Virus record (IMG/VR): IMGVR_UViG_3300031787_000001
Span: 124,001 to 188,000 of that record
DNA: 64,000 nucleotides
Reading direction: 5' to 3' (one strand)
The translations under genes and the position numbers were made by a program. Below the pieces are notes generated by a model. The model did not search any database and was not told where the DNA came from. It worked only from the letters and a program-made list of their open reading frames with translations. Below are positions 16,715 to 48,203 of this stretch, piece by piece; position 1 is the stretch's first letter; every line of letters starts with the position of its first letter.

Positions 16715-16867
16715 CCCCCCTTTCTAACCCCCCCTAAAAACCCCTATTTAAGGGGGGATACGGGAGGGGGGTGGTATAGGGGGGAGGGGTATGTAGGGAG
16801 ATAGGGGGGTCGCCAGAGAAATTTTGAATCGGGACGGGGGTGGTCGGTCTGTATCTTGGATAGGGGG
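16715..16867. other. C-run then G-run tract (G-quadruplex-capable) at the block boundary
   Basis: C6, C7, C4 followed by ten G3-G6 runs. Confidence 0.8.
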
Positions 16868-16870
16868 TAT

Positions 16871-16899
16871 AAAAAAAAGGTATCGTTTCCGATACCTTT
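16871..16899 (-). terminator. Intrinsic terminator
   Basis: A-run + AGGTATCG..CGATACCT. Confidence 0.75.
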
Positions 16900-16927
16900 G
16901 TGAACTCATTAGAGTCAATTTAAGACC

Positions 16928-17449
16928 TTATCTTTCTACAATGTAGTGAACACCACCCAAAGTAATTTCCTCAATAGAACTCAACTTAAATGATTGTACC
17001 AACACTCTCCTTTCTTGTGGTTGTCTTGAACTCTCACTCACTTTAACAAGGTAACTTTCAAACAATGTCTTTTCAACTTCGTTACCCTCAAAAATGTAAC
17101 TTACATTCGGTTTGATTTCGTCAAATCTTTCAACTTGTAAGTAGTGGGAATTGTGTTTCTCATTGAACAAAACACACTTTGAAATATGAACACCCACCTT
17201 ATTTTCCTCACTCACAAAATTACCCTCTCCACCCTCTTTTTTATCATTGGTATTCACTCTCGTTTCGTACTCATTTCCAATAAGGTAGTTACATTTGTTC
17301 ACTTTGAACACCTTATCATAATAAGGGTTATTTGTTTTGTTCATACGAACTTTTGTTTTGGAAACGATATTAACAAAGGTTGATTTATCAACATTCATTA
17401 AGATTTCCAATAATTCAGTTTGTCCGATTGTTTTTGTTTCTTTGTTCAT
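16928..17449 (-). CDS. Early hypothetical protein, paralog of 23462..23989; no Ala
   Basis: Shared IVSKTKVRMNK, SESSRQPQE; promoter at 17473-17504. Confidence 0.85.
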   Translation of the reverse strand: MNKETKTIGQTELLEILMNVDKSTFVNIVSKTKVRMNKTNNPYYDKVFKVNKCNYLIGNEYETRVNTNDKKEGGEGNFVSEENKVGVHISKCVLFNEKHNSHYLQVERFDEIKPNVSYIFEGNEVEKTLFESYLVKVSESSRQPQERRVLVQSFKLSSIEEITLGGVHYIVER

Positions 17450-17676
17450 AGTTTTAATTTTTAATTGTTTCACAAATATACACCCTCAAAATGTATATTT
17501 CCAAATTTTTTTTTCCCTTTAACAAAACTTTAACATTTCGGGGGTGAAGGTTCGGGGTGACTTTTTTCGTGGCGAGAACCTACAAAGATACAAAATTATT
17601 TGTTAATAAAAAGTTAAAGTTTTCGTTAACAAAATTTTAAGAAAAAAAATTTGGAGGTGAACCCGTGAAGGTTTGG

Positions 17677-17762
17677 ATTTTCTGTGGCGTGTAGGAAAAA
17701 AACCACAAAGGTACGAAATTATTTGTTAATAAAAAGTTAAAGTTATTATGAGCCAGAGAAAA
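17677..17762. repeat. TGGC inverted element (63-bp spacer); extra half-site 17564-17573
   Basis: ATTTTCTGTGGC..GCCAGAGAAAA; 40-bp direct repeats 17582-17621/17705-17744. Confidence 0.6.
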
Positions 17763-17888
17763 AGTTTTCCGGGTGATCCGGGGTTTACCCGTAAAATTCT
17801 TTAACATAACATTAACATTCGGGTTGATTGTTTTGGGGTGTATAAGGTGTATATTTGTATATCGTTCACAAGTTAAAACTCTACTACT

Positions 17889-18263
17889 ATGTTAAAAAGA
17901 ACTCTCACACTCGGACTTCATCATTGGACTGACAATGACTTAATCCTGAACTTTTATGTTACCAAATTCGGTACTCGGTACATTCATTTGAAAACCGAAG
18001 AAGAACTCTCCAAATTCATCGGTACAACTCCTTGTTCGTTTACCAAACAACAGATGAACTTCCGTTACCTTATGGGGTGTAAATCAAATGTCCTGACTGA
18101 CTACTCCAAACTTCAAAAGTTGGTGTTTGAAATGTTTGATGAAATCTCCTTCTACGAATTTCATCAAATCGTGAAAAAGATAGTTGGACAAGATGAATAC
18201 GAAAGAAATAAATTCTTTGTGGAAAATGGATATAACCCTGAACGAATGATAATGATAAGTTAA
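17889..18263 (+). CDS. Early hypothetical protein; no Ala
   Basis: Promoter upstream, terminator downstream. Confidence 0.8.
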   Translation: MLKRTLTLGLHHWTDNDLILNFYVTKFGTRYIHLKTEEELSKFIGTTPCSFTKQQMNFRYLMGCKSNVLTDYSKLQKLVFEMFDEISFYEFHQIVKKIVGQDEYERNKFFVENGYNPERMIMIS

Positions 18264-18414
18264 TCGGGTTGGAAACTGAAACGAAACCTCAACAGAAATG
18301 TTGGGGTTTTTTATTTCCCACAGAACTCCGTGTTCACCAGATTCGCTGGTGGTAAATTTCTTTGGCTTGTAGAACCAGTTAGAAGATGTGGTTGGGGACA
18401 CCGCATGCGAAAAT

Positions 18415-18475
18415 ATTTCTGTGGCGGTTGTCTTACATAATAGGGGTATTACAGGAGGTTACACGCCAAGGAAAT
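18415..18475. repeat. TGGC inverted element, spacer 39 (extra half-site 18356-18366)
   Basis: ATTTCTGTGGC/GCCAAGGAAAT. Confidence 0.85.
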
Positions 18476-18594
18476 TCCATAATCCCGGATCACCTGTCGT
18501 GTCATCGTATTACACATTCACAAAACTTTAACAAAATAAATTTGGATATAAGGGTATAAATTGGTTAACTTTGACGAAACAAACTTTCAAAGTT

Positions 18595-18876
18595 ATGTCT
18601 TACACAAAAGAAGAAATCAAAATGAACTTGTCAAGAAACCCTAAATGGATAGAAAGAGCGTTGGTTGTCTTACATAACCTCCAAACTACCGAAGAACAAA
18701 TCACAAACGAAACAATCAAAGAGAATGGGGTTGGTTTTAATTCATCGGATAGTCGGTATCTCTCCTATTGTGCGAAATGGATAAAGGGTGGTAATCACTT
18801 AAACGAGAAACACCTCACTAAATGTGGTCAGAAACTCCCAAAGTATTGGAAACAAATACACTCAATGATTAAGTAA
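18595..18876 (+). CDS. Early hypothetical protein
   Basis: ATG downstream of promoter. Confidence 0.8.
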   Translation: MSYTKEEIKMNLSRNPKWIERALVVLHNLQTTEEQITNETIKENGVGFNSSDSRYLSYCAKWIKGGNHLNEKHLTKCGQKLPKYWKQIHSMIK

Positions 18877-18964
18877 CTTCACACTCCACTCAAAACATTA
18901 AACCTCCGATAGTATCGGGGGTTTTTTGTTAGAACTCCGTGTTCACCAGATTCGCTGGTAGATA

Positions 18965-19010
18965 TTTTTTGTGGCGGATAGGTACAGATTAACCTACTCG
19001 CCATGGAAAA
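18965..19010. repeat. TGGC inverted element, spacer 24
   Basis: TTTTTTGTGGC/GCCATGGAAAA. Confidence 0.85.
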
Positions 19011-19128
19011 TTATCCTGATCGCAACAGCGGTTCACGGGGAAAATTCGTTAACAACATTTTAACAATAAAAATTTGGAAATATAAGGTATAATGTCGTAT
19101 ATTTGATAAACAATTAAAAACTACTACA

Positions 19129-19308
19129 ATGGACAAAATCACTCTCACACTCCTTCTCCTTACACTCGGACTAATGGGGTTAACAATGTTATTCTCTCAC
19201 TATATGAGGAATGACAAAATCTCAAACATTTTTCTTCGTGTTTTATTCGGTTTGACAATGATGACATTCACTCTCTTTATGATGGACATTTTTCTCTCAA
19301 ACATTTAA
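19129..19308 (+). CDS. 59-aa two-TM membrane protein (not in ORF track)
   Basis: MDKITLTLLLLTLGLMG.. directly after promoter. Confidence 0.7.
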   Translation: MDKITLTLLLLTLGLMGLTMLFSHYMRNDKISNIFLRVLFGLTMMTFTLFMMDIFLSNI

Positions 19309-19320
19309 TAACTACCAACT

Positions 19321-19659
19321 ATGACACACGAACAACTACACAACTTCGTATCGGAAAAAGGTGAAAGGGAATTTAACCCACAAGAAACCTTACAAGTATT
19401 AACCCACAACAGAACAACATATTGGTCTTGGGGTGTATCTAAACTCCTTAATATGTTTAATAAGGGGTTATGTTTGAAAGTATCAGGACATCACCACAAA
19501 GGTTGGGTAATCATCACACTCGGTTTTACAGACACTTACTCGGTGTTTTATGTATCAAACAATGGTAAAGTCAAAGATGAACAACACTTGGTCTATTTTG
19601 ACGAACTCACCGAAAGGATAGATGATAAAATCGAACGAATACCGATTTACAAACACTAA
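19321..19659 (+). CDS. Early hypothetical protein; no Ala
   Basis: ORF track. Confidence 0.8.
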   Translation: MTHEQLHNFVSEKGEREFNPQETLQVLTHNRTTYWSWGVSKLLNMFNKGLCLKVSGHHHKGWVIITLGFTDTYSVFYVSNNGKVKDEQHLVYFDELTERIDDKIERIPIYKH

Positions 19660-19751
19660 TCACGAAATCGTAATACAGAAACCCTCGACAAAAGTCGGGG
19701 GTTTTTTGTTTTTCCACAGAACTCCGTGTTCACCAGATTCGCTGGTGGTGA

Positions 19752-19805
19752 ATTTATGTGGCGGATCGTATTACAGATAAAGGTGGTATTACACGCCACA
19801 TAAAT
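19752..19805. repeat. TGGC inverted element, spacer 32
   Basis: ATTTATGTGGC/GCCACATAAAT (perfect). Confidence 0.9.
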
Positions 19806-19922
19806 TTTTTGGTTCAGATCCAGGTTTCCACCAGTGAAACTCTTTAACAATAGATTAACAAAATAAATTTGGAATATAAGGTTTAATGATGTATATTTGT
19901 TAAACAATTAAAACATACTACA

Positions 19923-20177
19923 ATGGACAAAAACAAACTAATTAACAGAATTGAAAACATTGGTTTTCTTCTCGGTTGTTTTATCGGTTTATTAACACTT
20001 ATGATGTTGGGGGCGGAACCTACTACTTGGGATGAGGATGGGTTGTACGATTATGAACACCTTTGGGATAAAGGAAATTCGGGTTGGTATGTTATGTGGA
20101 CTTGGGTTTGGTCAGTTGTTACTTTGATTGGGTTGATAGTGGTTAGGTCATTCATTAAGAAAAGTTTAACAAAATAA
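19923..20177 (+). CDS. Small membrane protein
   Basis: Two hydrophobic helices. Confidence 0.75.
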   Translation: MDKNKLINRIENIGFLLGCFIGLLTLMMLGAEPTTWDEDGLYDYEHLWDKGNSGWYVMWTWVWSVVTLIGLIVVRSFIKKSLTK

Positions 20178-20234
20178 ATTTGGTTTTACTCGGTATAAGT
20201 TGTATATTTGTATAAACAATTAAAAACAAAAATT

Positions 20235-20429
20235 ATGAAAAAGTTTTTCAGTTCTATTCTCGGTTTTCACTTGACAATTATGGTTGGGTTGGTTGTTATG
20301 TTTTACTTCAACAACTTGGAAGATAACTACCTAACAATCATTAACAACATTTTCTTGGTTATGATGTCTTTATCCGTTGTGTTATCGGTGGTCTTATGTT
20401 ACTTTGACAAACGAATTTCTAAAAGATAG
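20235..20429 (+). CDS. Small membrane protein
   Basis: Two TM helices; own promoter. Confidence 0.7.
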   Translation: MKKFFSSILGFHLTIMVGLVVMFYFNNLEDNYLTIINNIFLVMMSLSVVLSVVLCYFDKRISKR

Positions 20430-20530
20430 TTGTAGTTTTAATTGTGAACGAAACCACTCCGAAAGGGGTGGTTTTTTTATTTGTGGTATTACACAAAACT
20501 TGAATCGCGGTTCGAGCTGGGATTACACCT

Positions 20531-20576
20531 TTTTCTGTGGCGATCCGTATTACAGAAACCCACTCGCCATAAAAAA
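20531..20576. repeat. TGGC inverted element, spacer 24
   Basis: TTTTCTGTGGC/GCCATAAAAAA. Confidence 0.85.
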
Positions 20577-20683
20577 AGTTTACCAGGACGACAGGTATGA
20601 ATATGGTTTTGAAAAATAAATTTGGAATCAAAAAATATAAGTTGTATATTTGTGTATTATCTAACAAATTAAATTTATATCAA

Positions 20684-21025
20684 ATGAAAGAACAAAATGA
20701 ATGTAATGGAAAAATGTTTCCGAAAGGTTTTTGGTCAAAGAATGGTAAGCCCACACAAAACGCCTTAATGATGTATTTTGTGTATTTGACACATTTACCT
20801 GAAAGTTGGAAAAAGAAAGTAGTACACAAACCCTCACTCGAAAAAACACGACAATACTTTGATGTTGATTATGGTATTGAATGTATGTTAACTTGGGGGA
20901 TACAATTTGGTTGTAAAAATTCTAAAACGTCAGATGAAAGACACCACGCAATGTCTTTGGCTTATCACGACGCTTTGGGTATGATTGGTCAAGGTTACCG
21001 ATACACCGAATTGAAAATTAAGTAG
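20684..21025 (+). CDS. Early hypothetical protein
   Basis: Start reassigned downstream of promoter. Confidence 0.75.
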   Translation: MKEQNECNGKMFPKGFWSKNGKPTQNALMMYFVYLTHLPESWKKKVVHKPSLEKTRQYFDVDYGIECMLTWGIQFGCKNSKTSDERHHAMSLAYHDALGMIGQGYRYTELKIK

Positions 21026-21124
21026 TGTTTGGTTTTAATTGTGAACGAAAAGTCCTCAACGAAAGTTGGGGATTTTTTTTGTCAAGTCACAGACCTCCGT
21101 GTTCACCAGATTCGCTGGTGGACA

Positions 21125-21170
21125 TTTTTTGTGGCTGATCCTATTAGAGAAACCGACAAGCCATAGAAAT
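21125..21170. repeat. TGGC inverted element, spacer 24
   Basis: TTTTTTGTGGC/GCCATAGAAAT. Confidence 0.85.
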
Positions 21171-21278
21171 TTCAGGATGGAAGGTGATCCGAATTCACCT
21201 TCACAAAATTTTAACAAAAAAAATTTGGAATAAGTATGTATATGTTGTATATTTGTATAAATAATTAAAAAAAACATT

Positions 21279-21416
21279 ATGAAAAAGATTTATTCAGTTA
21301 TCGTAGTTATCGTTCTTGTATCATTAACAATGTCCTCTTGTAAAACAAGTGGGTATGGTTGTAAGGGGAAAGAAAGTTGGGGTGGATTGATGAAAAGAAT
21401 TAACAAACCTTATTAG
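21279..21416 (+). CDS. 45-aa lipoprotein (not in ORF track)
   Basis: MKKIYSVIVVIVLVSLTMSS-C lipobox; own promoter and terminator. Confidence 0.7.
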   Translation: MKKIYSVIVVIVLVSLTMSSCKTSGYGCKGKESWGGLMKRINKPY

Positions 21417-21532
21417 TAGTATGGTTGGTTTTAACCCGATGTTTTTACATCGGGTTTTTTATTTTTTTTAACATTTTAGATTTGAAATATAATATTTATT
21501 GTTGTATATTTGTTTAACTAAACCCACTCACT

Positions 21533-21736
21533 ATGAATTTACAATTAAGAACTGAACTAATCGGAAAAAGAATTATGATGATTTTTATGGATGACCCTCA
21601 ACCTATTGAACCAAACACAATGGGTACAATTATCGGAGTTGATGGGTTAAATCAATATCAAGTCAAATGGGATAACGGAAGAAGTTTATCGGTTATACCC
21701 GAAGAAGACCAATTCGTCATTATTGACACAGAGTAG
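21533..21736 (+). CDS. DUF4314-like protein
   Basis: MDDPQPI..GT...VD...QVKWDNGRSL.VIP.ED pattern. Confidence 0.75.
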   Translation: MNLQLRTELIGKRIMMIFMDDPQPIEPNTMGTIIGVDGLNQYQVKWDNGRSLSVIPEEDQFVIIDTE

Positions 21737-21832
21737 TCCGTTCGTTCCCTCATAAAGACAAACCTCAACAGAAATGTTGGGGTTTTTTGTTTCTCCACAG
21801 AACTCCGTGTTCACCATGCTCCCGGTATGTCA

Positions 21833-21878
21833 TTTTCTGTGGCTGATCGTATTACAGGAAGTTAGACGCCAAAGAAAT
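21833..21878. repeat. TGGC inverted element, spacer 24
   Basis: TTTTCTGTGGC/GCCAAAGAAAT. Confidence 0.85.
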
Positions 21879-22270
21879 TTCCAACGACCCGGATCAGGAA
21901 ATCGCCTGTCGGTTATCTTCACAAAGTTTTAACAAAATAAATTTGGAATATAAAGTATAATGATGTATATTTGTTAAACAATTAAAAACTACTACAATGA
22001 AACAAGACAATTCTGACCAATGGATTCAAGGATTAACATTAATAATCTGTTTTATTACACTTGTTATTGTAATCTCCTTAAAGTATTATCTAACGGGTGA
22101 AATCTAAAATAAATTTGGAATATAATAAATAATACCTTATATTTGTGTTATGAAACAGAAATACGAAAATAGATTTTACAAAATTTTACTTTTATTTTGG
22201 ATGATGGTATTCACCTTTGTTTACTTTCAAATAAAATATCAATTAGTTTTCCATTTCTAAAAAACGAAAT

Positions 22271-22423
22271 ATGAAAAATAATTATTTAAGTACAATTAAA
22301 AGAAAGGAACAAGTACAACAAGGAATGTACGATGGTCGTTTCCGTAGTCGTGTGGTGGTAGATAAGAAGAAGAAAGAAAGTAAAAACAAATGTCGTGTTA
22401 AACTTAAAATCAATTATGTATGA
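22271..22423 (+). CDS. 50-aa basic protein (not in ORF track)
   Basis: YDGRFRSRVVVDKKKK; ATGA-coupled to 22420. Confidence 0.6.
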   Translation: MKNNYLSTIKRKEQVQQGMYDGRFRSRVVVDKKKKESKNKCRVKLKINYV

Positions 22424-22629
22424 TACTTGAATTACATTCAGTCGGAAGTGTTATTGACACAGAAACACTATTCACATATCCAATGTTACTAAATGGTGGA
22501 TATGATAAAAATCAAAATGTCCATATTGACGATGTTGATATAGAGTGGTTTCATAGTTTGTCTGATGAAGATTTTGGAACAATAAATGAGTTAATCAATC
22601 AAAGAAACATTAAATCGGAAATAGTATGA
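22420..22629 (+). CDS. Hypothetical protein
   Basis: ORF track. Confidence 0.7.
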   Translation: MILELHSVGSVIDTETLFTYPMLLNGGYDKNQNVHIDDVDIEWFHSLSDEDFGTINELINQRNIKSEIV

Positions 22630-22851
22630 ACAGAGATAGACTAAATAAAATTGAAGAAATTGGTTTTCGTATTACAATGATATTGGTGTTTAGTGTTTTC
22701 ACTATTTGGTTGATTGGAACGATTGTCAAGTTAATAATGATATTGTCGTCATAGTTTAGGTTTGGTTTTAATTGTGAAGAAATCCCTCAACGAAAGTTGG
22801 GGGATTTTCTTTTGGAGGAACTTGAGTCGTGGTTCACCGTGTCTTCAGGGA

Positions 22852-22899
22852 TTTTTTGTGGCTGATCGTATTCAGGTCAACCTCACAAGCCACGGAAAT
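22852..22899. repeat. TGGC inverted element, spacer 26
   Basis: TTTTTTGTGGC/GCCACGGAAAT. Confidence 0.85.
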
Positions 22900-23023
22900 T
22901 TGGTAATCCGAATCACCTGTTTTCCTTCAGGAAATCCTTTCACAAATTTTTAACAAATTATTTTTGGAATAAAAATTTATATGGTGTATATTTGTTATAT
23001 CATTAACAATTAAAACAAACATT

Positions 23024-23191: not shown

Positions 23192-23288
23192 TGTTCTAAA
23201 TAAACCTATCAATAAAAATCCCTGACAATAGTCGGGGATTTTTTTTTCAAACACAAGAAGATGTGATCCGGATCAGCTCGACCGTGGA

Positions 23289-41600: not shown

Positions 41601-41690
41601 TAGTTTTTGTTTTGATAGAGAACCCACCAGTAAAATGGTGGGTTTTTTATTGCTGTTACCAGAGCAGATCGCAGCGCAAAGCACAGTGGA

Positions 41691-41835: not shown

Positions 41836-41967
41836 TTTTTACCGTGCCGGGCTGGGGTCGTGATCAAAAATATTTTTGCAAAATTTTAACAAAATATATT
41901 TGGATTATAACTTTATCCGTTGTATATTTGTGATGTCATTAATTATTAAACTCTAAATTTTATTAAC

Positions 41968-42423
41968 ATGGGAACTAGATCTCTCACAACATTCATTGAA
42001 AGATGGAACGATGAAAAGACAGGTAAAAAGAAACAAGTTAAGATTGTAACAATGTATCGTCAAATGGACGGTTACCCCGAAGGACACGGACTTGACCTCG
42101 CAGATTTTTTGGCTGGTGGTACTGTTGTTAATGGTTTGCCGATAGGTGTAATTACAGGTGAAGACAAGACACTTTACTTTAATGGAATGGGTTGTTTGTC
42201 CGCACAGGTAATCGGACATTTCAAAACCAATTCTGGAGGAATTTATTTACACAGGGGAGGAATTACCAACTGTTGGGAACAGTATCGATATGAGGTTATT
42301 GTAGATGAAGACAACCCGAAAGAAATCTTACTCCGTTGTTATGATGTGTATGACCGTAAATGGATATTCGAGGGAAACCCTAAAGATTTTGTTAAAAAAT
42401 ACAAAGAAAAAGAAAAAGTATAA
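41968..42423 (+). CDS. Hypothetical protein
   Basis: MGTRS, YRQ.DGYP.GHG motifs. Confidence 0.75.
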   Translation: MGTRSLTTFIERWNDEKTGKKKQVKIVTMYRQMDGYPEGHGLDLADFLAGGTVVNGLPIGVITGEDKTLYFNGMGCLSAQVIGHFKTNSGGIYLHRGGITNCWEQYRYEVIVDEDNPKEILLRCYDVYDRKWIFEGNPKDFVKKYKEKEKV

Positions 42424-42496
42424 AAAATATTTTTGTATTATAATTTAAAACTCCGTATATTTGTATCACATTATCTAACAATTTAAATTTTATTTT

Positions 42497-43039
42497 ATGG
42501 GATTAGACCAGTATCTCTCCAAGAAAACTTATGTTAAAAATTGGAGCTTCCACACTAAGGAACAAAAACACACTGTCACCGTTAAGAAGGGTGGTAAGAA
42601 AAGAACCGACATTAACCCTGAAAAAATCTCCTACATTGTTGAGGAAGTAATGTATTGGAGAAAAGCAAATCAAATTCATAATTGGTTTGTACAGAATGTT
42701 CAGGATGGTGAAGATAATTGTCGGGAACATTATGTGGAGAAAGAAAAACTGAAAGAACTTGTTGACACCTGTAAGAAAGTTCGTGACAGTTTATTGAAGT
42801 CCGAAATCAAATTGGTTCAAGCTGAGGTTGGTTGGGCTAATGGTGAGAAGATGTATGACAATATCGAAGTTTACACCGACACGGAAGTCGCGGAGGAATT
42901 GTTACCACCGAGTCCAGGTTTCTTCTTTGGTTCATATGAGTTCGATAAATGGTATCTTCAGGATATTGAAAATACTATTAACGCGATCGAACCACTATTA
43001 GACAGTGACGGTGAATTTTATTACGACTCGTCTTGGTAA
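42497..43039 (+). CDS. Hypothetical protein
   Basis: MGLD.YL, YWRKANQIH.WF, GFFFG motifs. Confidence 0.8.
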   Translation: MGLDQYLSKKTYVKNWSFHTKEQKHTVTVKKGGKKRTDINPEKISYIVEEVMYWRKANQIHNWFVQNVQDGEDNCREHYVEKEKLKELVDTCKKVRDSLLKSEIKLVQAEVGWANGEKMYDNIEVYTDTEVAEELLPPSPGFFFGSYEFDKWYLQDIENTINAIEPLLDSDGEFYYDSSW

Positions 43040-43113
43040 AAAAATATTGGGGATATTGTTTGGTAAAACGATATCCCCTTTATATCTTTGTATCACATTT
43101 TAAAATAAATCTT

Positions 43114-43982
43114 ATGACAAAAGAATTGTTACAAACTTGGACAACCAAAGCGAAAGAAGTATTAGAGGGACGAACTATTATATCAGTCCGTTATCTTAAT
43201 GATAAAGAAATGGAAATGATGGGTTGGTATAAACGACCTGTCGTGTTCTTCCTCGACAACGGAACATCCTGTATTCTCTCTATGGACGACGAGGGTAATG
43301 ATGGTGGTGTTTTATTCTATGGTAAAGATGGTGTATTACCTACACTTTAAAATAAATCTATATGAGAAGTTTTTTAGAATTAAAAACAGCAATAACAAAC
43401 GGTGTTCCATTAGTATGGAATGACCCTGACCCAATCAAAGGTACTGATTATACAATCACATACATTGAACCACTAGATGAAATTGATGATGATGAAGACC
43501 CAATGGGTTATCCAATTCTAATTCAATATGGGGGTTCAGAAGCTCAGGTTTATTTACATGAAATCATTTTAAAATAAATCTATATGAAAAAACGAATTAA
43601 AGTTAGGTTCAATCTCGGTAGAGGTAAGAACTATCTAAAATGGAAAATCGAATATCCATCAGGTGAGGTAGAGTATCATTATCCTATCAATGTACAACTC
43701 GTAATGAAGAACTGTCAGCTTAAGAACAACAGGAATGCCGCTGAGAAGATTTATAAAAATCAATCACACAAAGTCGTTTGTGCTTGGGTACTCTGTGAGG
43801 ATATCGATGTGAAGTTCGATAAATTTAAGGCGTATGACACGATGGATCTGGATCGATTAACATACAATCCAAGAAGATTACCATATTGGGTGAAAGATGA
43901 TGGTTATCTAATGTGTATGGATGGAGTAACAGTAAATGAAATTGGAACAGTGGATTATAAATTATTCATAACTAAAAATTAA
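43114..43982 (+). CDS. Three hypothetical ORFs (43114-43350, 43362-43577, 43584-43982)
   Basis: Each preceded by aaataaatct. Confidence 0.7.
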
Positions 43983-43986
43983 AACT

Positions 43987-44583
43987 ATGCCAAATTGGTG
44001 TTCAAACTCAATCACCATAACAGGTGATGAGGAAAAAATTAAATTCTTAAAGAATGTAATTGAGAATGGTATCCCCACTGAAAAACGACAGGAAGCGAAT
44101 GTTTTCATGACTCTCGTCGGAATTCCTCCTGACATGAATCTGTATGAATATGAACAGAAGTGGTATGGAACCAACATAGATAATTGGGGGACCAAATGGG
44201 ATGTGGCATATAATGAATCTTATTTCTCTTTTGAGGATACTGAAATAACCATGTCACCTGATACAGCTTGGTCACCACCAATTGGATTTGCTCAAAGTTT
44301 GGCAAGGAACTATGGGGTAAAGGTGGAGATGTACTATGAGGAACCAGGTTCCGACTTCTGTGGTAAAACTATAATCACTGAAGATGGTACGTTGACGGAG
44401 GAGGATTATGATTTTGTACATGGGAAATATGTCTTTGATAAAGAAGGTTTTTGGAATGAAATTATAAATAATATAGAGTTTGCAAAAGAAGATGATGTAT
44501 CTTTGGAAAACTTCATATTGGATTATGGTTATGTGAATGAAGAAGACAAAAAAGAGATTGAGAAATTATATAATGAATCATAG
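43987..44583 (+). CDS. DUF1281/YubB ferredoxin-like domain protein
   Basis: MPNWC.N, NWGTKWD, TAWSPP, Y.EPG. Confidence 0.75.
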   Translation: MPNWCSNSITITGDEEKIKFLKNVIENGIPTEKRQEANVFMTLVGIPPDMNLYEYEQKWYGTNIDNWGTKWDVAYNESYFSFEDTEITMSPDTAWSPPIGFAQSLARNYGVKVEMYYEEPGSDFCGKTIITEDGTLTEEDYDFVHGKYVFDKEGFWNEIINNIEFAKEDDVSLENFILDYGYVNEEDKKEIEKLYNES

Positions 44584-44628
44584 TTTTTATTTTTAACCAG
44601 CTGTTTATACAGCACAAATCAAACAAGT

Positions 44629-45108
44629 ATGGGTAGAGTTAACAAACTTACAGAGGGTGTGTTCACCAGTATCGTAGGTAATCAAACAATCATTCCTTCG
44701 TATGACAAATTCTTAAATGTTCAGGACGATTTAAAAAAACCGAGTCAGGAACTTAAGAAATTAATCACACAATACAAGAAAGAAATAACATCAAATAAAA
44801 CAATATTTGAGAAGTTAGCAAAGCTTGAGGATGTGATTATGCAGATCCGTACACGGGACAACCTGTCCAATGATATGATCAAATTGAACATTGTCCGTGA
44901 GTACATCTACGCTCGTATTCCTTTCCATCGTAACGATAAGGAATCAAACGACATCCGTGTCATCGTTGGATTAACTGAATTCAATGGTGTGGAAGTGGAC
45001 AAGATGTATGACAACAAAGAGTTTATGGACAAAGCCAAGAATAAATTGGTTGAGGCTATGAACGAGATTATTAACCAAAATTTGGAAACTGTAAATAAAA
45101 TAGATTAA
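44629..45108 (+). CDS. Hypothetical protein
   Basis: ORF track. Confidence 0.75.
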   Translation: MGRVNKLTEGVFTSIVGNQTIIPSYDKFLNVQDDLKKPSQELKKLITQYKKEITSNKTIFEKLAKLEDVIMQIRTRDNLSNDMIKLNIVREYIYARIPFHRNDKESNDIRVIVGLTEFNGVEVDKMYDNKEFMDKAKNKLVEAMNEIINQNLETVNKID

Positions 45109-45109
45109 T

Positions 45110-46027
45110 ATGAAAAAGATTAACAATGTATTATCATTATGTGACGGTATCTCAATGTTCCAATACGCATTGAAAAAATCAGGAATTGAGTACAAGAATT
45201 ATTTTTCAGGTGAGATCAGTGAAACTGCTATGAGTATAGCAATGAAGAATTTCCCGAAAACAAAACAACTTGGTGATATCCGTAACATCAAAGGAAAAAA
45301 TTTACCTGAGATCGATATTATGGTTGCGGGATTTCCTTGTCAACAATTCTCAAGAGCAGGTAATGAAGATGGATTAACAGATATTCACGGAAATGTTCTC
45401 GACACATACAAGAAGTATCGTGAAGCCGATAAAAAGGGATGGATTAGAGAAGGATCTCAATCACACATTTTTTGGGAAGTATATAGGATCTTCAAAGAAG
45501 TTAAACCGAAGTATTTCATTTTTGAGAATGTTAAAATGGATCCAAAGTGGATGTACATCATATCAACATCTTTCGGTGTTAGTCCCATCTTAATAGATTC
45601 AAAATTGGTTTCCGCTCAACATCGTGAGAGATACTATTGGACAAATATTCCTGGTGCTATAATTCCAAAAGATAAAGGAATTCATCTTTCAAGTATTATT
45701 CCTGATGCGATCGGTGGACACGGTGTTAGAAACATTGATACAGGTAAGAAAACTCCTGAAGGTAAAAAAGTTTGGCGTAAGAACGCTACAACAAGAAAAG
45801 ATGGTAAGGCCAACTGTTTAACAACAAGAAAGGGTAACTGTTCCAAAGTGGAATTAAAGGACGGAACCATTAGACAAATCACCATCGAGGAAGCTGAACA
45901 ACTTCAAAATCTCCCGAAGAACTATACCAAAGTTCCTGGTGTTGCTGAAGGTAAGAGGTGGCACGCCATCGGTAATGGGTTCACCGTCAATGTATTTGTT
46001 CACCTATTAAAAGGTCTTAAAAAATAA
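45110..46027 (+). CDS. DNA (cytosine-5)-methyltransferase
   Basis: GFPCQ (motif IV), FENV (VI), Q.RER (VIII), IGNG (X). Confidence 0.9.
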   Translation: MKKINNVLSLCDGISMFQYALKKSGIEYKNYFSGEISETAMSIAMKNFPKTKQLGDIRNIKGKNLPEIDIMVAGFPCQQFSRAGNEDGLTDIHGNVLDTYKKYREADKKGWIREGSQSHIFWEVYRIFKEVKPKYFIFENVKMDPKWMYIISTSFGVSPILIDSKLVSAQHRERYYWTNIPGAIIPKDKGIHLSSIIPDAIGGHGVRNIDTGKKTPEGKKVWRKNATTRKDGKANCLTTRKGNCSKVELKDGTIRQITIEEAEQLQNLPKNYTKVPGVAEGKRWHAIGNGFTVNVFVHLLKGLKK

Positions 46028-46078
46028 ATTTTGTGGAAAACATTTCACATATTATATTTGTAATCTAAATCCAAGTGT

Positions 46079-46426
46079 ATGACAAATAGCAATAGAATGT
46101 TAGTTCAGGATCTACAGAAACAACTGATCAATAAGGTTCTTTCCTTTATGGATGAGAATGATTTAAATATGGTGGAATTAAAAACCCCACTCAGGATCTT
46201 TGTTGAAGAACCATCATTTGATGATTATGTTATGGTTCCAATTGTGGCGAGGTCATTGTATGCTGATGGTTCCATCGGAGCTTATGATGAAGAAATAAAG
46301 ATCGAGAACTGTAGTATCTACGAGATCGCATACATAATGGATGTTCTCGAGAGTGGGGACTACACGGTAGATGAAGACGACTTTATCGATCCCGCTGGTG
46401 GACGAGGATTACATTCTCACATTTAA
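46079..46426 (+). CDS. Hypothetical protein
   Basis: ORF track. Confidence 0.7.
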   Translation: MTNSNRMLVQDLQKQLINKVLSFMDENDLNMVELKTPLRIFVEEPSFDDYVMVPIVARSLYADGSIGAYDEEIKIENCSIYEIAYIMDVLESGDYTVDEDDFIDPAGGRGLHSHI

Positions 46427-46451
46427 ATTTCGTAACTCAAAACTCAAGTAT

Positions 46452-47024
46452 ATGCACACTATCAATCTCGGAAAAAAAGTGGTCGTATCCGACCCTTGTT
46501 ACACCATCCCAACTTGGTGTCAAGCTGTAATCGAAAATGTAAAACCCGGCGTGTATCACACGACAGTCAGGAAACACGACGCTGGTGATTGGGGAAATCG
46601 TTGTTCAATGGTCTTTGCAATCCACGAGGAGTATGTTAACTTTGATCACCTGTTACACGGGAAATGGGAAGAACACCCAGCATCCATCGGAGTTGACTCG
46701 GGTCAATGTGGGATCTTTTCTTTTGAATCCTACAGGAATGACGAAGTTAAGTTCGATTTCGAACCATATGACTTCGGTAATGATTACCTTAGTAATAATG
46801 AGGGTGGTGACCTGTGGTATCGTCATATGTGTAAACACACATTGAGTGATCAATCTTGGGGAGTGTATGACAGTGGGATTGTTTCCAGTTCAGGATTCGG
46901 AGATGGAGCTTATCAATTGTATGTTGTTAAGAAACGAAACAAGATCGTGGCCTTCGCCATTGACTTTGGAGTTGAGGAGGGTAAGTACATCGACTTCGAT
47001 TACAGGAAGAAAGAATTAGTTTAA
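46452..47024 (+). CDS. DUF4241-like protein
   Basis: VSDPCY, GVDSGQ, SGFGDG.Y. Confidence 0.65.
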   Translation: MHTINLGKKVVVSDPCYTIPTWCQAVIENVKPGVYHTTVRKHDAGDWGNRCSMVFAIHEEYVNFDHLLHGKWEEHPASIGVDSGQCGIFSFESYRNDEVKFDFEPYDFGNDYLSNNEGGDLWYRHMCKHTLSDQSWGVYDSGIVSSSGFGDGAYQLYVVKKRNKIVAFAIDFGVEEGKYIDFDYRKKELV

Positions 47025-47090
47025 GAACTTGGTGGTCAAATGACCACCATTTTCATTTAAACCCTATTATAAAAATATAAATCTAATATT

Positions 47091-47519
47091 ATGTACTCAG
47101 ATAACTTGATCAGAATCATCAGACCATCTCAGTGGATTAATTTAATCTATATCGTTCTTGGTATTGCTTTGATCCAAACTATCTTTGTTCCCCTTCTTGC
47201 TGTCATCAAGATGTTGGATGTATATTTTTGGAGATATGAATTCAGGGAGAGGACCATCATTGAAAGAAGGGGAATATTATCCGTGACAAGGAAGGAGGTT
47301 CACTTCTACAGGATTAAATCCATCAGAATCGACGAACCACTGTGGATGAGAATCTTCGGACTGTCCAAAGTATCCATAATCACCTCCGATCAATATCATC
47401 CTGAATTGGTTTTATACGCTGTATCCGACGGACATTACCTCCGTGAGTACATTAGATCTAACACCGATCAGTGGAGAAAGCTCGAAGGAGTTAAAGAATT
47501 TGACCTATATAACCTATAA
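47091..47519 (+). CDS. Membrane protein with bacterial PH (bPH_2) domain
   Basis: TM pair; RGIL...EV..YRI......PL..RIFGL. Confidence 0.75.
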   Translation: MYSDNLIRIIRPSQWINLIYIVLGIALIQTIFVPLLAVIKMLDVYFWRYEFRERTIIERRGILSVTRKEVHFYRIKSIRIDEPLWMRIFGLSKVSIITSDQYHPELVLYAVSDGHYLREYIRSNTDQWRKLEGVKEFDLYNL

Positions 47520-47672
47520 TTTATGATAAGTAAGATTGCTTGGTTCTTTGATTACTACATCTTGTACTTCCTGTACAATGAGAGAAAGATCAACAGGTAC
47601 CATCGTAATATGATCAACAAGTACGGGGACAAATACAGAATACGAATCGACAGGTGAGATATGACCCCTCGA

Positions 47673-47683
47673 TTTTCTGTGGC
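47673..47683 (+). repeat. Unpaired TGGC half-site (another at 48160-48170)
   Basis: TTTTCTGTGGC. Confidence 0.55.
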
Positions 47684-47807
47684 AAATCCATATGGGAGAG
47701 GTATGCCCCGACAATAAGTTCTTTGAAATCCTTACTGGGATAAAGTTTTGTTAAAAAAAGTTACGGCAAGATTTTGTTTTCTACCATTCATTTTGTATGT
47801 TTATGAT

Positions 47808-48020
47808 ATGAAGAAAACAACAACCAAGGCTACTCGTGGAACAGGTTCCAAGACAGCCAACAAGACCCGCCGCACCACTTATGTTGCGGTAACGAACAAT
47901 GTTTACCATGACGGTACTAGTTACCGTGTACGTGTAAGTGTTGACGGTATCAAGTACAGCAAGAACTTCACTTCGAAGAAGAATGCTATTGCTTACCGCA
48001 ACCAGTTGTTGTCCGCTTAA
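47808..48020 (+). CDS. Small basic protein, AP2-like DNA-binding fold
   Basis: NVY....YRVRV..DG..YSKNF...A..YR. Confidence 0.55.
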   Translation: MKKTTTKATRGTGSKTANKTRRTTYVAVTNNVYHDGTSYRVRVSVDGIKYSKNFTSKKNAIAYRNQLLSA

Positions 48021-48112
48021 TTCGGACACAACCTCACACAGGTAAACAATCTCAGTAAGACCTTCGTGGATAAATCCTATACAGGTGTATGGGACCCACG
48101 GGGTCTTTTTAC

Positions 48113-48142
48113 ATTACGGACCTCCCTTCGGTCGGTCCTTCA
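48113..48142. repeat. 30-bp hairpin repeat, copy 1 (copy 2 at 49034-49063)
   Basis: attacggRcctcccttcggtcggYccttca. Confidence 0.85.
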
Positions 48143-48203
48143 GGAAAATGAACATCAGATTTTCCGTGGCATAACTATGCTCATTAATTAACCAAATATA
48201 TTT

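What the first reader, a model, noticed from the sequence alone, without database searches (positions are those of the whole stretch)
16812..48170. About 20 cassette-spacer elements: inverted WTTTHYNTGGC arms with quantised spacing and fixed distance to the promoter
Seen: between terminator and promoter of most early cassettes lies ~41-53 bp of GC-richer DNA, a left arm (TTTCTGTGGC-like), a spacer, a right arm (GCCACAGAAA-like), then the promoter. Spacers in 20 pairs are 15-17 (n=9), 23-26 (n=9), 32 and 39, i.e. steps of ~8 bp; one further pair has 63. Right arm end to -33 TTTGG is 62-64 bp in 12 cases and otherwise 66, 67, 45, 54, 74, 75, 80, mostly about whole helical turns away, despite divergent intervening sequence. 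Arms vary mostly independently and lone half-sites exist (16812, 17564, 18356, 35708, 41691, 47673, 48160), which favours a dsDNA protein-binding site over an RNA stem. Nearest known analogue: promoter/stem-loop (PeSL) cassettes of T4-type phages; I do not recall this arm geometry there. Inference: an undescribed nucleoprotein site that activates, protects or recombines the first-expressed cassettes. Candidate binders are the ParB-like (34871), AP2-like (47808) or a virion-delivered protein.
Basis: partly seen in the sequence, partly recalled or inferred. Interest (0 to 1): 0.9.

Follow-up and report, generated by a model that had tools for sequence, protein, structure and literature searches.

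The report
Paired protein-binding sites between phage early cassettes
Between most early genes of an uncultured jumbo phage of Bacteroidota sit two short inverted DNA words that behave like docking sites for a phage-specific DNA-binding protein rather than an RNA hairpin, and related phages carry the same device with changed words, so it looks like an undescribed control or boundary element for early genes.

Summary
The motif occurs 44 times against about 2 expected, all within 16.8-48.2 kb, forming 21 inverted pairs and 7 lone sites.

The window is a roughly 290-kb uncultured phage with Bacteroidota-type -33/-7 promoters. Eight related lineages carry the same element, but the arms differ by lineage. 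Only the GGC/GCC core is constant, and both arms change together even at orthologous junctions.

Arms do not covary within an element, many would fold poorly, and no Rfam family matches, so an RNA or hairpin reading is unlikely.

- The 8-bp step is peculiar to this phage. Across 88 pairs the best period is about 10.4 bp, starting from a compact 3-4-bp form. That suggests two sites kept on one face of the helix.
- The distance to the promoter is not constrained family-wide (30-124 bp, no phasing).
- Sister lineages place single sites right next to promoters.

Best reading: autonomous double-stranded-DNA half-sites for a co-evolving, probably phage-encoded protein that marks terminator-promoter gaps and coordinates or insulates the early cassettes. 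The binder is unidentified. None of the ParB-like, AP2-like or PhoB-type candidates tracks arm specificity. A cassette-recombination role is not excluded.

The parts
16812..16822 (-). Lone site at the left edge of the block, right-arm type on the + strand. It serves as the terminator-side arm of the inverted first cassette.
   Evidence: It lies 49 nt after the T-run of the minus-strand terminator.
16928..17573 (-). First cassette, inverted: promoter (-33 at 17505), gene 17449-16931, and a promoter-side arm at 17563-17573.
   Evidence: arm end to -33 is 58 nt on the minus strand; the homologous gene is on the + strand in L037.
17678..17762 (.). Arm pair, spacer 63. The spacer holds a 42-bp copy of 17580-17621.
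18356..18366 (+). Lone left-type site, followed by a remnant GC-rich box and the next pair.
18415..18475 (.). Arm pair, spacer 39, with three TTACA-type units.
18965..19010 (.). Arm pair, spacer 24.
19752..19805 (.). Arm pair, spacer 32, with two GTATTACA boxes. This is the only pair with a matching rare arm variant.
20531..20576 (.). Arm pair, spacer 24.
21125..21170 (.). Arm pair, spacer 24.
21833..21878 (.). Arm pair, spacer 24.
22852..22899 (.). Arm pair, spacer 26.
23289..23326 (.). Arm pair, spacer 16.
24084..24128 (.). Arm pair, spacer 23, with an internal 7-nt duplication.
25064..25108 (.). Arm pair, spacer 23, with an internal 7-nt duplication.
25975..26012 (.). Arm pair, spacer 16.
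26839..26876 (.). Arm pair, spacer 16.
28515..28551 (.). Arm pair, spacer 15.
29352..29390 (.). Arm pair, spacer 17. The right arm is degenerate at its outer end.
30305..30351 (.). Arm pair, spacer 25. The right arm is degenerate at its outer end.
31759..31805 (.). Arm pair, spacer 25, with consensus arms.
33099..33135 (.). Arm pair, spacer 15.
35708..35718 (+). Lone left-type site 37 bp upstream of the -33 element of the winged-helix gene.
38351..38387 (.). Arm pair, spacer 15. It is orthologous to L034 11202, which has a 4-bp spacer.
40690..40726 (.). Arm pair, spacer 15. It is orthologous to L034 13516, which has a 15-bp spacer and different arms.
41691..41701 (+). Lone left-type site.
41799..41835 (.). 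Arm pair, spacer 15.
47673..47683 (+). Lone left-type site upstream of the AP2-like gene. L040 has a site in the same place but with its own lineage's arm sequence.
48160..48170 (+). Lone left-type site 33 bp upstream of the ATG of ORF 48204-49034. It is the last site of the block.
18541..46644 (+). Array of 37 Bacteroidota-type promoters (TTTG, 17-23 nt, TAnnTTTG). Most of them carry TT[AC]ACA boxes 7 and 18 bp upstream of -33.
34871..35614 (+). ParB-like gene, a candidate binder. It is present in all six related lineages whose fetched DNA reaches it.
35801..36211 (+). Stand-alone PhoB/OmpR-type winged-helix DNA-binding protein, a candidate binder. It fits the TTAACA boxes better than the arms.
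47808..48020 (+).
   Evidence: No Pfam or PDB sequence hit.

Best explanation
**What it is.** Each arm is an autonomous recognition site of 11-12 bp in double-stranded DNA, with an invariant GGC at the inner end and an A/T-rich outer end. It is read by a sequence-specific DNA-binding protein that is most likely encoded by the phage and co-evolves with the sites.

**Where it sits.** The arms lie in a junction module of about 200 bp that separates the early gene cassettes. In order, the module holds:
1. an intrinsic terminator;
2. a GC- and GATC-rich box;
3. the left site;
4. a centre that usually carries a CGTATTACA box;
5. the right site;
6. a second GC- and GATC-rich box;
7. two TTAACA boxes;
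8. a host-type -33/-7 promoter.

**How it most likely works.** Two copies of the protein bind head to head on the same face of the helix. The ancestral compact form is a palindrome with a 3-4-bp centre, and the centre has grown by roughly whole helical turns. The result is a small nucleoprotein complex in the untranscribed gap between one cassette's terminator and the next cassette's promoter. I infer that it gives one phage protein a handle on about 20 early cassettes at once. It would act as a boundary against read-through and/or as the switch that times or shuts off early transcription. In sister lineages, single sites placed directly beside promoters would do this job at close range.

**Shown:** the sites, their selective conservation, their concerted change between lineages, the lack of pairing constraint, the spacing pattern and the promoter-proximal single sites.

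**Inferred:** that a protein binds, that it is phage-encoded, and what binding does to transcription.
For: **Enrichment and confinement.** 44 matches against 1.9 expected, all in the + strand early block. All five exact-consensus pairs of the 286.8-kb contig of the same phage fall in this block.

**Selective conservation.** The core and flanks are 21/21 while the neighbouring sequence has diverged.

**No pairing constraint.**
- Left arm against reverse-complemented right arm: 209 identical positions, against 206.1 when right arms are shuffled among elements (P = 0.22).
- Mismatches are not compensated.
- 7 of 20 elements fold no better than at least 5% of shuffles as single-stranded DNA.
- There is no palindromy beyond the arms.
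- No Rfam or tRNA hit.

**Family comparison**. Eight more lineages carry the element at the same kind of junction, with lineage-specific arms:

| Lineage | Arm type |
|---|---|
| window, L258 | ATTTCTGTGGC |
| L034, L037, L038, L039, L040, L047 | ATWTTGnTTGGC |
| L044/45 | AWTGAAYGGC |

- Only GGC/GCC is constant.
- The position written n is free on both arms.
- Consistent left/right asymmetries exist within a lineage.

**Concerted change at orthologous places.**
- The junctions 38351 and 40690 align with L034 11202 and 13516, between orthologous genes, but both arms differ.
- The lone site upstream of the orthologous AP2-like gene carries each lineage's own arm.

**The half-site is the working unit.**
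- Lone sites are real.
- In L037, 13 of 22 promoters have a left-type TGGC exactly 7-9 or 18-19 bp upstream of -33, one helical turn apart, and none in the opposite orientation.
- In L258 the right-type site lies 25 nt upstream of -33 at 5 of 5 promoters, with a left arm at only 2.
- Left-type sites, oriented with transcription, outnumber right-type: 26 to 18 here, 28 to 15 in L037 and 31 to 15 in L040.

**Spacing.** Over 88 pairs from nine lineages:
- The best period is 10.45 bp with phase 4.1 bp (R = 0.54).
- 67 of 88 spacers fall within +/-2 bp of 4.1 + 10.45n, against 48% expected.
- After collapsing to 37 lineage-level clusters, P = 0.012 for the a-priori period of 10.5 bp.

**Plausible readers are encoded in the block.**
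- A protein whose AlphaFold2 model best matches ParB-CDP/CTP, KorB and Noc structures.
- A stand-alone PhoB-type winged helix.
- The relatives' half-site TGTTTGGC matches the parS half-site TGTTTCAC at 6 of 8 positions (consensus from PMC7383237).
Against: - No binder is identified and nothing was measured.
- The ParB-like protein has only one column that separates the window from the TTGGC lineages, and that column lies outside the putative DNA-binding helices.
- The winged-helix recognition helix and wing are almost identical between the window and L034, whose arms differ.
- The AP2-like core is identical in L040.
- The spacing periodicity is not significant once the period is treated as free (scan-corrected P = 0.13 at cluster level). 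Copies within a lineage are not independent.
- The window's own spacers fit 8 bp better (R = 0.80) than 10.5 bp (R = 0.57).
- Right arm to promoter shows no phasing in the family (R = 0.13/0.085, P = 0.72). A stereospecific contact with RNA polymerase from the paired sites is therefore unlikely, and the proposed effect on transcription is indirect.
- Two terminator-promoter junctions (21433/21481 and 27330/27382) lack the element, so it is dispensable for termination and initiation as such.
- Only 64 kb of a genome of about 290 kb was seen.
- Gene conversion among repeats could contribute to the concerted change.
Confidence: 0.5

Rival explanations
1. Cassette-boundary recombination sites. Each cassette (right-type arm, promoter, gene, terminator, left-type arm) would be a unit that a site-specific recombinase excises, inserts or inverts. 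The compact palindrome with a 3-4-bp centre would be the crossover site. The array would then be an integron- or shufflon-like store of self-expressed early genes.
For: - Cassette order and content differ greatly between relatives that share genes at 65-80% nucleotide identity.
- The first cassette is inverted here relative to L037 and is bounded by the two arm types at canonical distances.
- The compact form is 9-12-bp inverted arms around 3-4 bp, which resembles simple recombinase core sites (established knowledge of loxP/dif/hix-type sites).
- Remnant half-modules exist at 18356-18415.
Against: - No recombinase, integrase or transposase domain was found in any of about 60 window ORFs scanned.
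- Spacers of 15-63 bp, as in all 21 pairs of this phage, are incompatible with a fixed crossover region.
- Arms are homogenised within a genome rather than travelling with their cassette.
- Many lone promoter-proximal half-sites, with a one-turn offset in L037, make no sense as crossover sites.
- One resolved homology breakpoint, upstream of the ParB-like gene, lies at the promoter and not at an arm.
- The five near-identical contigs show no cassette polymorphism.
Confidence: 0.15
2. Binding sites for a host protein, such as a Bacteroidota transcription factor, a nucleoid protein or an RNA-polymerase-associated factor. The phage would exploit it from the first moment of infection, and arm differences between lineages would reflect different hosts.
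For: - The sites flank promoters that must fire before any phage protein exists.
- The promoters themselves are host-type.
- None of the phage candidates tracks arm specificity.
Against: - A scan of 185,579 species' genomes for the compact relatives' palindrome gave only single hits scattered over all phyla. There was no Bacteroidota regulon.
- At least three arm types occur among closely related phages, which is easier to explain with a phage-borne reader.
Confidence: 0.12
3. A hairpin in RNA or single-stranded DNA. Candidates are a processing or stabilising stem in read-through transcripts, a back-up terminator, or an N4-like extruded hairpin promoter.
For: - The arms are inverted repeats, 85% Watson-Crick overall (178 of 210).
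- The best copies would fold at -8 to -13 kcal/mol.
- The compact forms in relatives have 3-4-nt loops.
Against: - No compensatory change.
- Left/right asymmetry is consistent within lineages, for example T.C or T.T at a fixed position in L037 and L039.
- 7 of 20 stems are no better than shuffles.
- Loop lengths show a period of about 10.4 bp, which is meaningless for a hairpin.
- The element lies downstream of strong intrinsic terminators and upstream of promoters.
- No Rfam match.
- Lone half-sites are common.
Confidence: 0.05
4. No function of its own. The arms would be the best-preserved part of an intergenic module that spreads by duplication and gene conversion, as in PeSL-type homologous shuffling. 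The regularities would be inherited, not selected.
For: - The constant 62-64 bp to the promoter and the two spacer classes in this phage are explained by common descent of the copies.
- Two junctions lack the element.
Against: - The 4-bp core and flanks are invariant in 21 of 21 pairs, while the neighbouring 45 bp have diverged to about 50%.
- The element survives, with the core intact, in nine lineages whose shared genes are only 65-80% identical.
- Lone sites lie outside the repeated module.
Confidence: 0.06

Closest known systems
PeSL (promoter-early stem-loop) cassettes of T4-type phages (PMC2839356, PMC4122927)
   Same: - Arrays of small, mostly unknown early genes, each with its own host-type promoter preceded by a stem-loop terminator.
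- Located in a plastic region whose gene order and content differ between relatives.
- Two junctions here (21433/21481 and 27330/27382) are plain PeSL-like fusions.
   Different: - In 21 junctions a module of about 110-170 bp with two inverted protein-site-like arms lies between terminator and promoter. PeSLs have the stem-loop directly upstream of the promoter and no such arms.
- The promoters are Bacteroidota -33/-7 type, not -35/-10.
- Mini-circle formation is not testable here.
Operator/stoperator sites of cluster A mycobacteriophages (L5 gp71 family; PMC9283540, PMC6550527)
   Same: - More than 20 copies of a 13-bp-class asymmetric site in short intergenic gaps of one phage genome.
- The site can work singly, near promoters or between genes.
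- The consensus differs between related phages together with its reader.
- There is an excess of sites oriented with transcription (26 to 18 here).
   Different: - Most sites here come as head-to-head pairs with spacing that appears helically phased.
- In the window they are confined to the early block, not spread genome-wide.
- The phage looks virulent and jumbo, and no gp71-like repressor was found.
- Binding and elongation block are untested.
ParB-family sites: parS, Noc NBS and RK2 KorB operators (PMC7383237; PDB 6sdk, 8qa9, 7ol9 as fold matches)
   Same: - A protein with a predicted ParB/KorB/Noc-like fold is the best-conserved gene of the block.
- Sites are inverted repeats, and the relatives' half-site matches the parS half-site at 6 of 8 positions.
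- From my own knowledge, KorB acts on many promoters from operators at variable distances. That would fit the unconstrained arm-to-promoter distance.
   Different: - parS, NBS and KorB sites are contiguous palindromes. Here the halves are 3-63 bp apart.
- Pfam's ParB domain model does not hit the protein.
- Its sequence does not track arm type.
- CTP binding and clamp loading are untested.
Integron attC sites
   Same: Imperfect inverted repeats of variable total length that separate gene cassettes in a one-directional array.
   Different: - No pairing constraint.
- The conserved bases are the inner ones rather than the outer core sites.
- Cassettes carry their own promoter and terminator.
- No integrase is seen.
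Cooperative binding of repressors to operators separated by whole helical turns (lambda cI, AraC, LacI-type looping; from my own knowledge)
   Same: Spacing classes differ by about one helical turn, with the phase of the compact site preserved.
   Different: Those systems use complete operators for dimers. Here single half-sites appear to be moved apart, and the statistics are only suggestive.

Membership tests
PeSL (T4-type promoter/stem-loop cassette) | Stem-loop terminator immediately upstream of the early promoter, forming one compact composite motif | tested here: not met
   In 21 junctions the terminator T-run is 32-53 bp from the left arm, and the right arm is a further 45-80 bp from -33. 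Only 21433/21481 and 27330/27382 are direct fusions.
PeSL (T4-type promoter/stem-loop cassette) | Host-sigma early promoter in front of small ORFs in a hyperplastic region | tested here: met
   37 TTTG, 17-23 nt, TAnnTTTG promoters on the + strand at 18.5-46.6 kb. Most ORFs have no family.
PeSL (T4-type promoter/stem-loop cassette) | Indels, replacements and shuffling between close relatives that map to the motif; mini-circles | tested here: inconclusive
   Gene order is scrambled between lineages. However, relatives are only 65-80% identical, so breakpoints are not resolved, and the near-identical contigs show no indels. Circles are not testable.
Mycobacteriophage stoperator system | Many copies of an asymmetric 13-bp-class site in short intergenic spaces | tested here: met
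   44 strict matches, all intergenic within the block. The half-site is asymmetric.
Mycobacteriophage stoperator system | Single orientation correlated with the direction of transcription, spread through the genome | tested here: not met
   18 of 44 sites are in the opposite orientation as partners of pairs. Sites are absent from the 32 kb of flanking minus-strand blocks.
Mycobacteriophage stoperator system | Cognate monomeric two-domain repressor that binds the site and stops elongation | not testable with these tools
   No binder was identified. Binding and transcription assays are needed.
Integron attC | Arms must pair (folded bottom strand), with conserved outer core sites RYYYAAC/GTTRRRY | tested here: not met
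   No covariation. Folds are weak. The conserved bases are the inner GGC/GCC.
Integron attC | Promoterless cassettes served by an adjacent integrase, attI and Pc | tested here: not met
   Each cassette has its own promoter and terminator. No integrase was found in about 60 ORFs of the window. The rest of the genome was not seen.
parS / NBS / KorB-operator class (ParB-family loading sites) | Contiguous 13-16-bp palindrome bound by a ParB-family dimer | tested here: not met
   Half-sites are separated by 15-63 bp here and by at least 3 bp in all relatives.
parS / NBS / KorB-operator class (ParB-family loading sites) | A ParB-family protein (N-terminal CTP-binding domain plus helix-turn-helix) encoded nearby | tested here: inconclusive
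   PHROG 12305 at 1e-28. The AlphaFold2 model has pLDDT 79.5. Its top Foldseek hits are ParB-CDP, KorB and Noc at E of about 3e-3 to 2e-2 with TM 0.3-0.4. There is no Pfam hit and no specificity correlation.
Known RNA families (Rfam 15), tRNA/tmRNA | Match at gathering score | tested here: not met
   0 matches in the whole window.
N4-type hairpin promoter | 5-7-bp stem with a 3-nt loop at a fixed place before the start site | tested here: not met
   Loops are 15-63 nt here, and the arms lie 45-80 bp upstream of a host-type promoter. The definition of the family is from my own knowledge.

The most novel reading that the evidence does not exclude
The arms are the ends of self-contained expression cassettes (promoter, gene, terminator) that a still unseen phage recombinase excises, inserts and flips. 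The early region of these jumbo phages would then be an integron-like, actively reshuffled library of host-takeover genes. The compact 3-4-bp-spaced palindrome would be the live crossover site and the filled ones retired or regulated copies.
Probability: 0.12. Interest if true: 0.85.

Novelty: new variant of a known kind. Interest (0 to 1): 0.55.

Why it matters
**If the reading is right.** A whole family of uncultured phages of about 300 kb from Bacteroidota wires its first-expressed genes through one repeated protein-DNA device. The recognition word has switched at least twice between close relatives.

**A natural specificity-switch series.** The arm types are TTTCTGTGGC, TTGnTTGGC and ATGAAYGGC, with dozens of sites per genome. 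This is comparable to the stoperator/immunity system of mycobacteriophages, but in a virulent jumbo phage and in a phylum whose phage gene regulation is almost unstudied.

**Practical uses.**
- A cheap marker for finding early regions in metagenomic Bacteroidota phage contigs.
- Compact terminator-insulator-promoter parts for Bacteroidota genetics.

**What stays open.** It also sharpens the question of how promoter/terminator cassettes are kept apart and reshuffled. The recombination reading remains testable with long-read population data.

Tried and rejected
- **Known RNA.** Rfam at gathering threshold and ARAGORN found nothing.
- **Hairpin.** Arm-arm covariation is absent. Single-strand DNA folds are weak for a third of the copies. 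No complementarity extends beyond the arms.
- **Miniature transposon with long terminal repeats.** Rejected on the same result.
- **Host regulon.** An exact compact palindrome was scanned in 185,579 genomes. It gave only scattered single hits.
- **Cultured relatives.** None were found by megablast, blastn or tblastn in 50,697 phage records.
- **Fixed or phased distance from right arm to promoter.** There is no periodicity family-wide.
- **Winged-helix gene as reader of the TTAACA boxes.** The gene occurs in the window phage and in L034, both of which have the boxes. L175 has the gene and no boxes. This is left as a lead only.
- **ParB-like protein as arm reader.** No residue pattern follows arm type.
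- **AP2-like protein as arm reader.** The core is identical in L040.
- **First-cassette protein.** It has no family, no informative Atlas hit and no fold match.
- **Orthology of ORF 48204-49034 with the L040 ORF that follows a lone site.** tblastn does not support it, so the claim was dropped.
- **Exact breakpoints of the first-cassette inversion.** They cannot be resolved at about 70% identity.
- **Similarity of CGTATTACA to the phiKZ early-promoter word TATATTAC (PMC7058600).** Noted, but with no supporting context.
- **Sigma-54, IHF and Pho-box comparisons of the arms.** Made from memory; none fit.
- **Metagenome scan for strain variants with cassette indels.** It yielded only one new lineage, L258, and no variants of this phage.

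Full report
**Context**

The window is low-GC DNA (about 31%). A + strand block runs from about 16.8 to 49 kb (positive GC skew) between two minus-strand blocks.

The + block holds 37 matches to the Bacteroidota promoter form TTTG, 17-23 nt, TAnnTTTG, most extended to TTTGGAA...GTATATTTG. It also holds about 20 strong intrinsic terminators. These bracket small ORFs that mostly lack any family.

Recognisable genes in the flanks and the block:
- tRNA nucleotidyltransferase
- an HD protein
- an RNA-repair HAD domain protein
- GDP-mannose dehydratase and an epimerase
- a Tae4-like amidase
- an HNH endonuclease
- a C5 methylase
- SprT-like and DUF932 proteins
- a ParB-like protein
- a PhoB-type winged-helix protein

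Five IMG/VR contigs of up to 286,785 bp are identical to the window over every fetched stretch. The object is therefore an uncultured jumbo phage. It has no nucleotide or close protein match among 50,697 deposited phage records. There are only distant protein links to Rak2-like jumbo phages.

**Checking the observation**

Pairing left-type with right-type sites gives 21 pairs. Spacers are 15-17 (9), 23-26 (9), 32, 39 and 63. Right arm to -33 is 62-64 bp in 12 pairs, plus 45, 54, 66, 67, 74, 75 and 80. All seven lone sites are present.

In an alignment anchored on the arms, TGGC/GCCA and the neighbouring T/A runs are 21/21, while the surrounding 45 bp rarely exceed 50% for the commonest base. 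The T-run of the upstream terminator ends 32-53 bp before the left arm in 17 pairs.

**Anatomy of the whole junction**

The arms are part of a larger repeated module. Three further features are enriched.
- **A strand-specific GTATTACA box.** There are 24 copies against 4 expected, 23 of them on the + strand at 18.4-41.3 kb. It usually sits 2-7 nt after the left arm as nGATC(C)GTATTACA.
- **GATC.** 37 copies against 9.4 expected across the box before the left arm, the spacer and the box after the right arm.
- **TT[AC]ACA boxes** exactly 7 and 18 bp upstream of -33, at 21 and 15 of 37 promoters.

The stretch between right arm and promoter aligns between copies. The constant 62-64 bp is therefore inherited with the module.

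The two main spacer classes are also related by descent. The short class is the GATC-GTATTACA core. The long class is the same core plus 8-10 nt. The pairs at 24084 and 25064 carry a 7-nt internal duplication, and the 32- and 39-bp spacers carry two and three TTACA-type units.

Two junctions (21433/21481 and 27330/27382) join terminator and promoter directly, without the element.

**Relatives**

Searches with the DUF932 protein, the ParB-like protein and the arm pattern brought in eight further lineages:
- L034
- L035-37
- L038
- L039
- L040
- L044/45 (contigs of 181 and 334 kb)
- L047 (311 kb)
- L258

They share individual genes with the window at 65-80% nucleotide identity, in scrambled order. 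All have the same promoter type, and all have the element, but with different arms.

| Lineage | Arms |
|---|---|
| L034, L037, L038, L039, L040, L047 | ATWTTGnTTGGC / GCCAAnCAAWAT (L040 also TTGTCTGGC; L039 right arm GCCAATCATTA) |
| L044/45 | AWTGAAYGGC / GCCATTCAWWT |
| L258 | window type |

Only GGC/GCC is constant. The CGTATTACA (or GTCATACA) box recurs in the spacers of all lineages even though the arms differ.

At two junctions flanked by orthologous genes, both arms differ between the window and L034 while position is kept. Spacers are 15 against 4 bp at one junction and 15 against 15 bp at the other. A lone left-type site upstream of the orthologous AP2-like gene has the window's word here and L040's word there.

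The sites therefore change in concert across a genome, including outside the repeated module.

**Hairpin or protein site?**

- Shuffling right arms among the 21 elements leaves the number of matching positions unchanged (209 observed, 206.1 expected, P = 0.22).
- In L034 the free position n is complementary in 2 of 11 pairs. L037 and L039 keep a fixed mismatch.
- Folded as single-stranded DNA, the elements range from -2.6 to -13.2 kcal/mol. Seven of 20 are matched by at least 5% of shuffles.
- Nothing beyond the arms is complementary.
- Rfam and ARAGORN find nothing.

Half-sites also occur alone in meaningful places.
- L037 has a left-type TGGC 7-9 or 18-19 bp upstream of -33 at 13 of 22 promoters, and never the inverse orientation. 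These are the very positions that the TTAACA boxes occupy in the window phage.
- L258 has the right-type site 25 nt upstream of -33 at all five promoters, with a left arm at only two.

These facts fit a double-stranded-DNA site read one half at a time.

**Spacing**

Across relatives, spacers run from 3-4 bp to about 60 bp. The 3-4-bp form is frequent in L034, L039, L040 and L044, and gives a compact palindrome of 22-26 bp.

Over 88 pairs from nine lineages:
- The Rayleigh statistic peaks at a period of 10.45 bp (R = 0.54) with phase 4.1 bp.
- The length classes are about 4, 15, 25, 36, 46 and 56 bp.
- 67 of 88 fall within +/-2 bp of this ladder, against 48% expected.

Collapsing each lineage's length classes to 37 points gives R = 0.35 and P = 0.012 for the a-priori helical period. 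The P value is 0.13 if the period is left free.

I take the spacing as suggestive evidence that the two sites are kept on one face of the helix.

By contrast, the distance from right arm to -33 ranges from 30 to 124 bp with no periodicity (R = 0.13 over all elements, 0.085 over clusters, P = 0.72). The pair is therefore a self-contained unit whose exact place in the gap does not matter.

**Recombination**

For this reading:
- Cassette order is scrambled between lineages.
- The first cassette (16812-17573) is inverted here relative to L037.
- It carries a promoter-side arm 58 nt from its own -33 and a terminator-side arm 49 nt after its T-run.

That is what arm-to-arm inversion would give, but breakpoints cannot be placed at 70% identity.

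Against this reading:
- No recombinase domain appears in about 60 scanned ORFs.
- Every pair in this phage has a spacer too long for a crossover site.
- Arms follow the genome, not the cassette.
- The one breakpoint I could place (upstream of the ParB-like gene, window against L034) lies at the promoter.

I keep this as the main rival at 0.15.

**Who binds?**

*ParB-like protein.* It occurs in all six relatives whose DNA reaches it. Its AlphaFold2 model (pLDDT 79.5) finds ParB-CDP, KorB and Noc structures first, at E of about 3e-3 to 2e-2. The relatives' half-site TGTTTGGC resembles the parS half-site TGTTTCAC (PMC7383237). However, the halves are never contiguous, and no residue pattern follows arm type.

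*Winged-helix protein.* The protein at 35801-36211 is a stand-alone PhoB/OmpR effector domain. Its recognition helix and wing are nearly identical in L034. It suits the 11-bp-spaced TTAACA direct repeats better than the arms, but L175 has the gene without the boxes.

*AP2-like protein.* Its core is unchanged in L040.

*Host factor.* This is not supported by a genome-wide scan for the compact palindrome, although that test was narrow.

The binder is therefore unknown.

**Mechanism I commit to (confidence 0.5)**

A sequence-specific protein, probably phage-encoded, binds each arm. Two copies bound head to head on one face form a small complex in the silent gap between a terminator and the next promoter.

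The complex serves as a common handle on the early cassettes. It would provide insulation against read-through and/or concerted shut-off or timing. Promoter-proximal single sites would do the direct work in some lineages.

- **Shown:** the sites, their conservation, the concerted switches, the absence of pairing constraint, the spacing and position statistics.
- **Inferred:** binding, the origin of the binder, and the effect on transcription.

**Comparison and novelty**

The cassette array works like the PeSL regions of T4-type phages but fails their defining compact terminator-promoter fusion. The multi-copy, lineage-specific, singly competent sites work like mycobacteriophage stoperators but fail on orientation and distribution. 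ParB-family sites and attC fail on contiguity and pairing respectively.

I found no description of this element in the searched literature. I rate it a new variant of a known kind (multi-copy phage regulatory sites within promoter/terminator cassette arrays), of moderate interest. The interest would be higher if the recombination reading proved true.

**Limits**

- Only 64 kb of about 290 kb was seen.
- Relatives are known from fragments of 2-21 kb.
- Copies within a genome are not independent.
- Nothing here measures binding or transcription.

Noticed in passing
window 16700-16811; L037 1173-1337; L040 2846-2992: A C-run then G-run tract of about 110 bp (several G4-G6 runs, with possible quadruplex or hairpin potential) sits exactly where the minus-strand block meets the early block. 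The first arm follows it directly. It is 77-79% conserved in two other lineages, better than most genes. It may be a genome end, an origin or an injection-leading signal.
   Followed up: partly
window 18446-41284 (23 + strand copies); spacers of all related loci: The strand-specific box CGTATTACA (variants GTCATACA, GTATGACA) is conserved in all lineages although the arms differ. It lies 2-7 nt after the left arm, and also just after or before some terminators. It shares TATTAC with the phiKZ early-promoter word (PMC7058600). Its function is unknown.
   Followed up: partly
window, the 45 bp before left arms, the spacers, and the 45 bp after right arms: GATC is enriched 3-5 fold (37 observed, 9.4 expected from shuffles) in the GC-rich boxes around the arms. 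Relatives show the same in their flanks. A link to Dam-type methylation or a GATC-reading protein is possible.
   Followed up: partly
window, 7 and 18 bp upstream of the -33 element of promoters between 18541 and 42432; also L034 and L038: Direct repeats TT[AC]ACA with an 11-bp period lie immediately upstream of -33, at 21 and 15 of 37 promoters here. The layout resembles a Pho box. A stand-alone PhoB-type winged-helix gene lies at 35801-36211. In L037 the arm half-site TTGGCA occupies the same two positions instead.
   Followed up: partly
window 16812-17573: The first cassette of the block is inverted relative to its homologue in L037 (1462-2004). Its protein is conserved as the first gene after the G-rich tract in L037 and L040. 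It has no family or fold match.
   Followed up: partly
window 17580-17621 and 17703-17744: A 42-bp direct repeat. The second copy fills most of the exceptional 63-bp spacer. A truncated promoter-like TTTGG follows the first copy at about 17650.
   Followed up: no
window about 18319-18328, 19716-19725, 21792-21801 (and a weaker copy near 21092): A third, right-arm-like word CCACAGAAC lies directly after the terminator T-run. It is followed by a conserved box with its own small hairpin (CACCAG...CTGGTG), which contains the E. coli Chi octamer GCTGGTGG. That is probably a coincidence in a Bacteroidota phage.
   Followed up: no
window 21433-21512 and 27330-27413: Two terminator-promoter junctions without any arm element. 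They are plain PeSL-like fusions and show that the element is optional.
   Followed up: yes
L040 12700-18300: A run of lone left-type sites (ATATTGTCTGGC or ATATTGTTTGGC), each preceded by a GATC-rich box. They sit 20-100 bp before gene starts in a stretch with no host-type promoter match. This could be a second, factor-dependent promoter class, but no common downstream box was found.
   Followed up: partly
window 2082-3790, 55179-55700, 57313-59177, 10913-11929, 45110-46027: Auxiliary genes typical of very large phages: tRNA nucleotidyltransferase with an HD protein, an RNA-repair HAD domain, GDP-mannose 4,6-dehydratase plus an epimerase, a Tae4-like amidase, and a C5 cytosine methylase.
   Followed up: no
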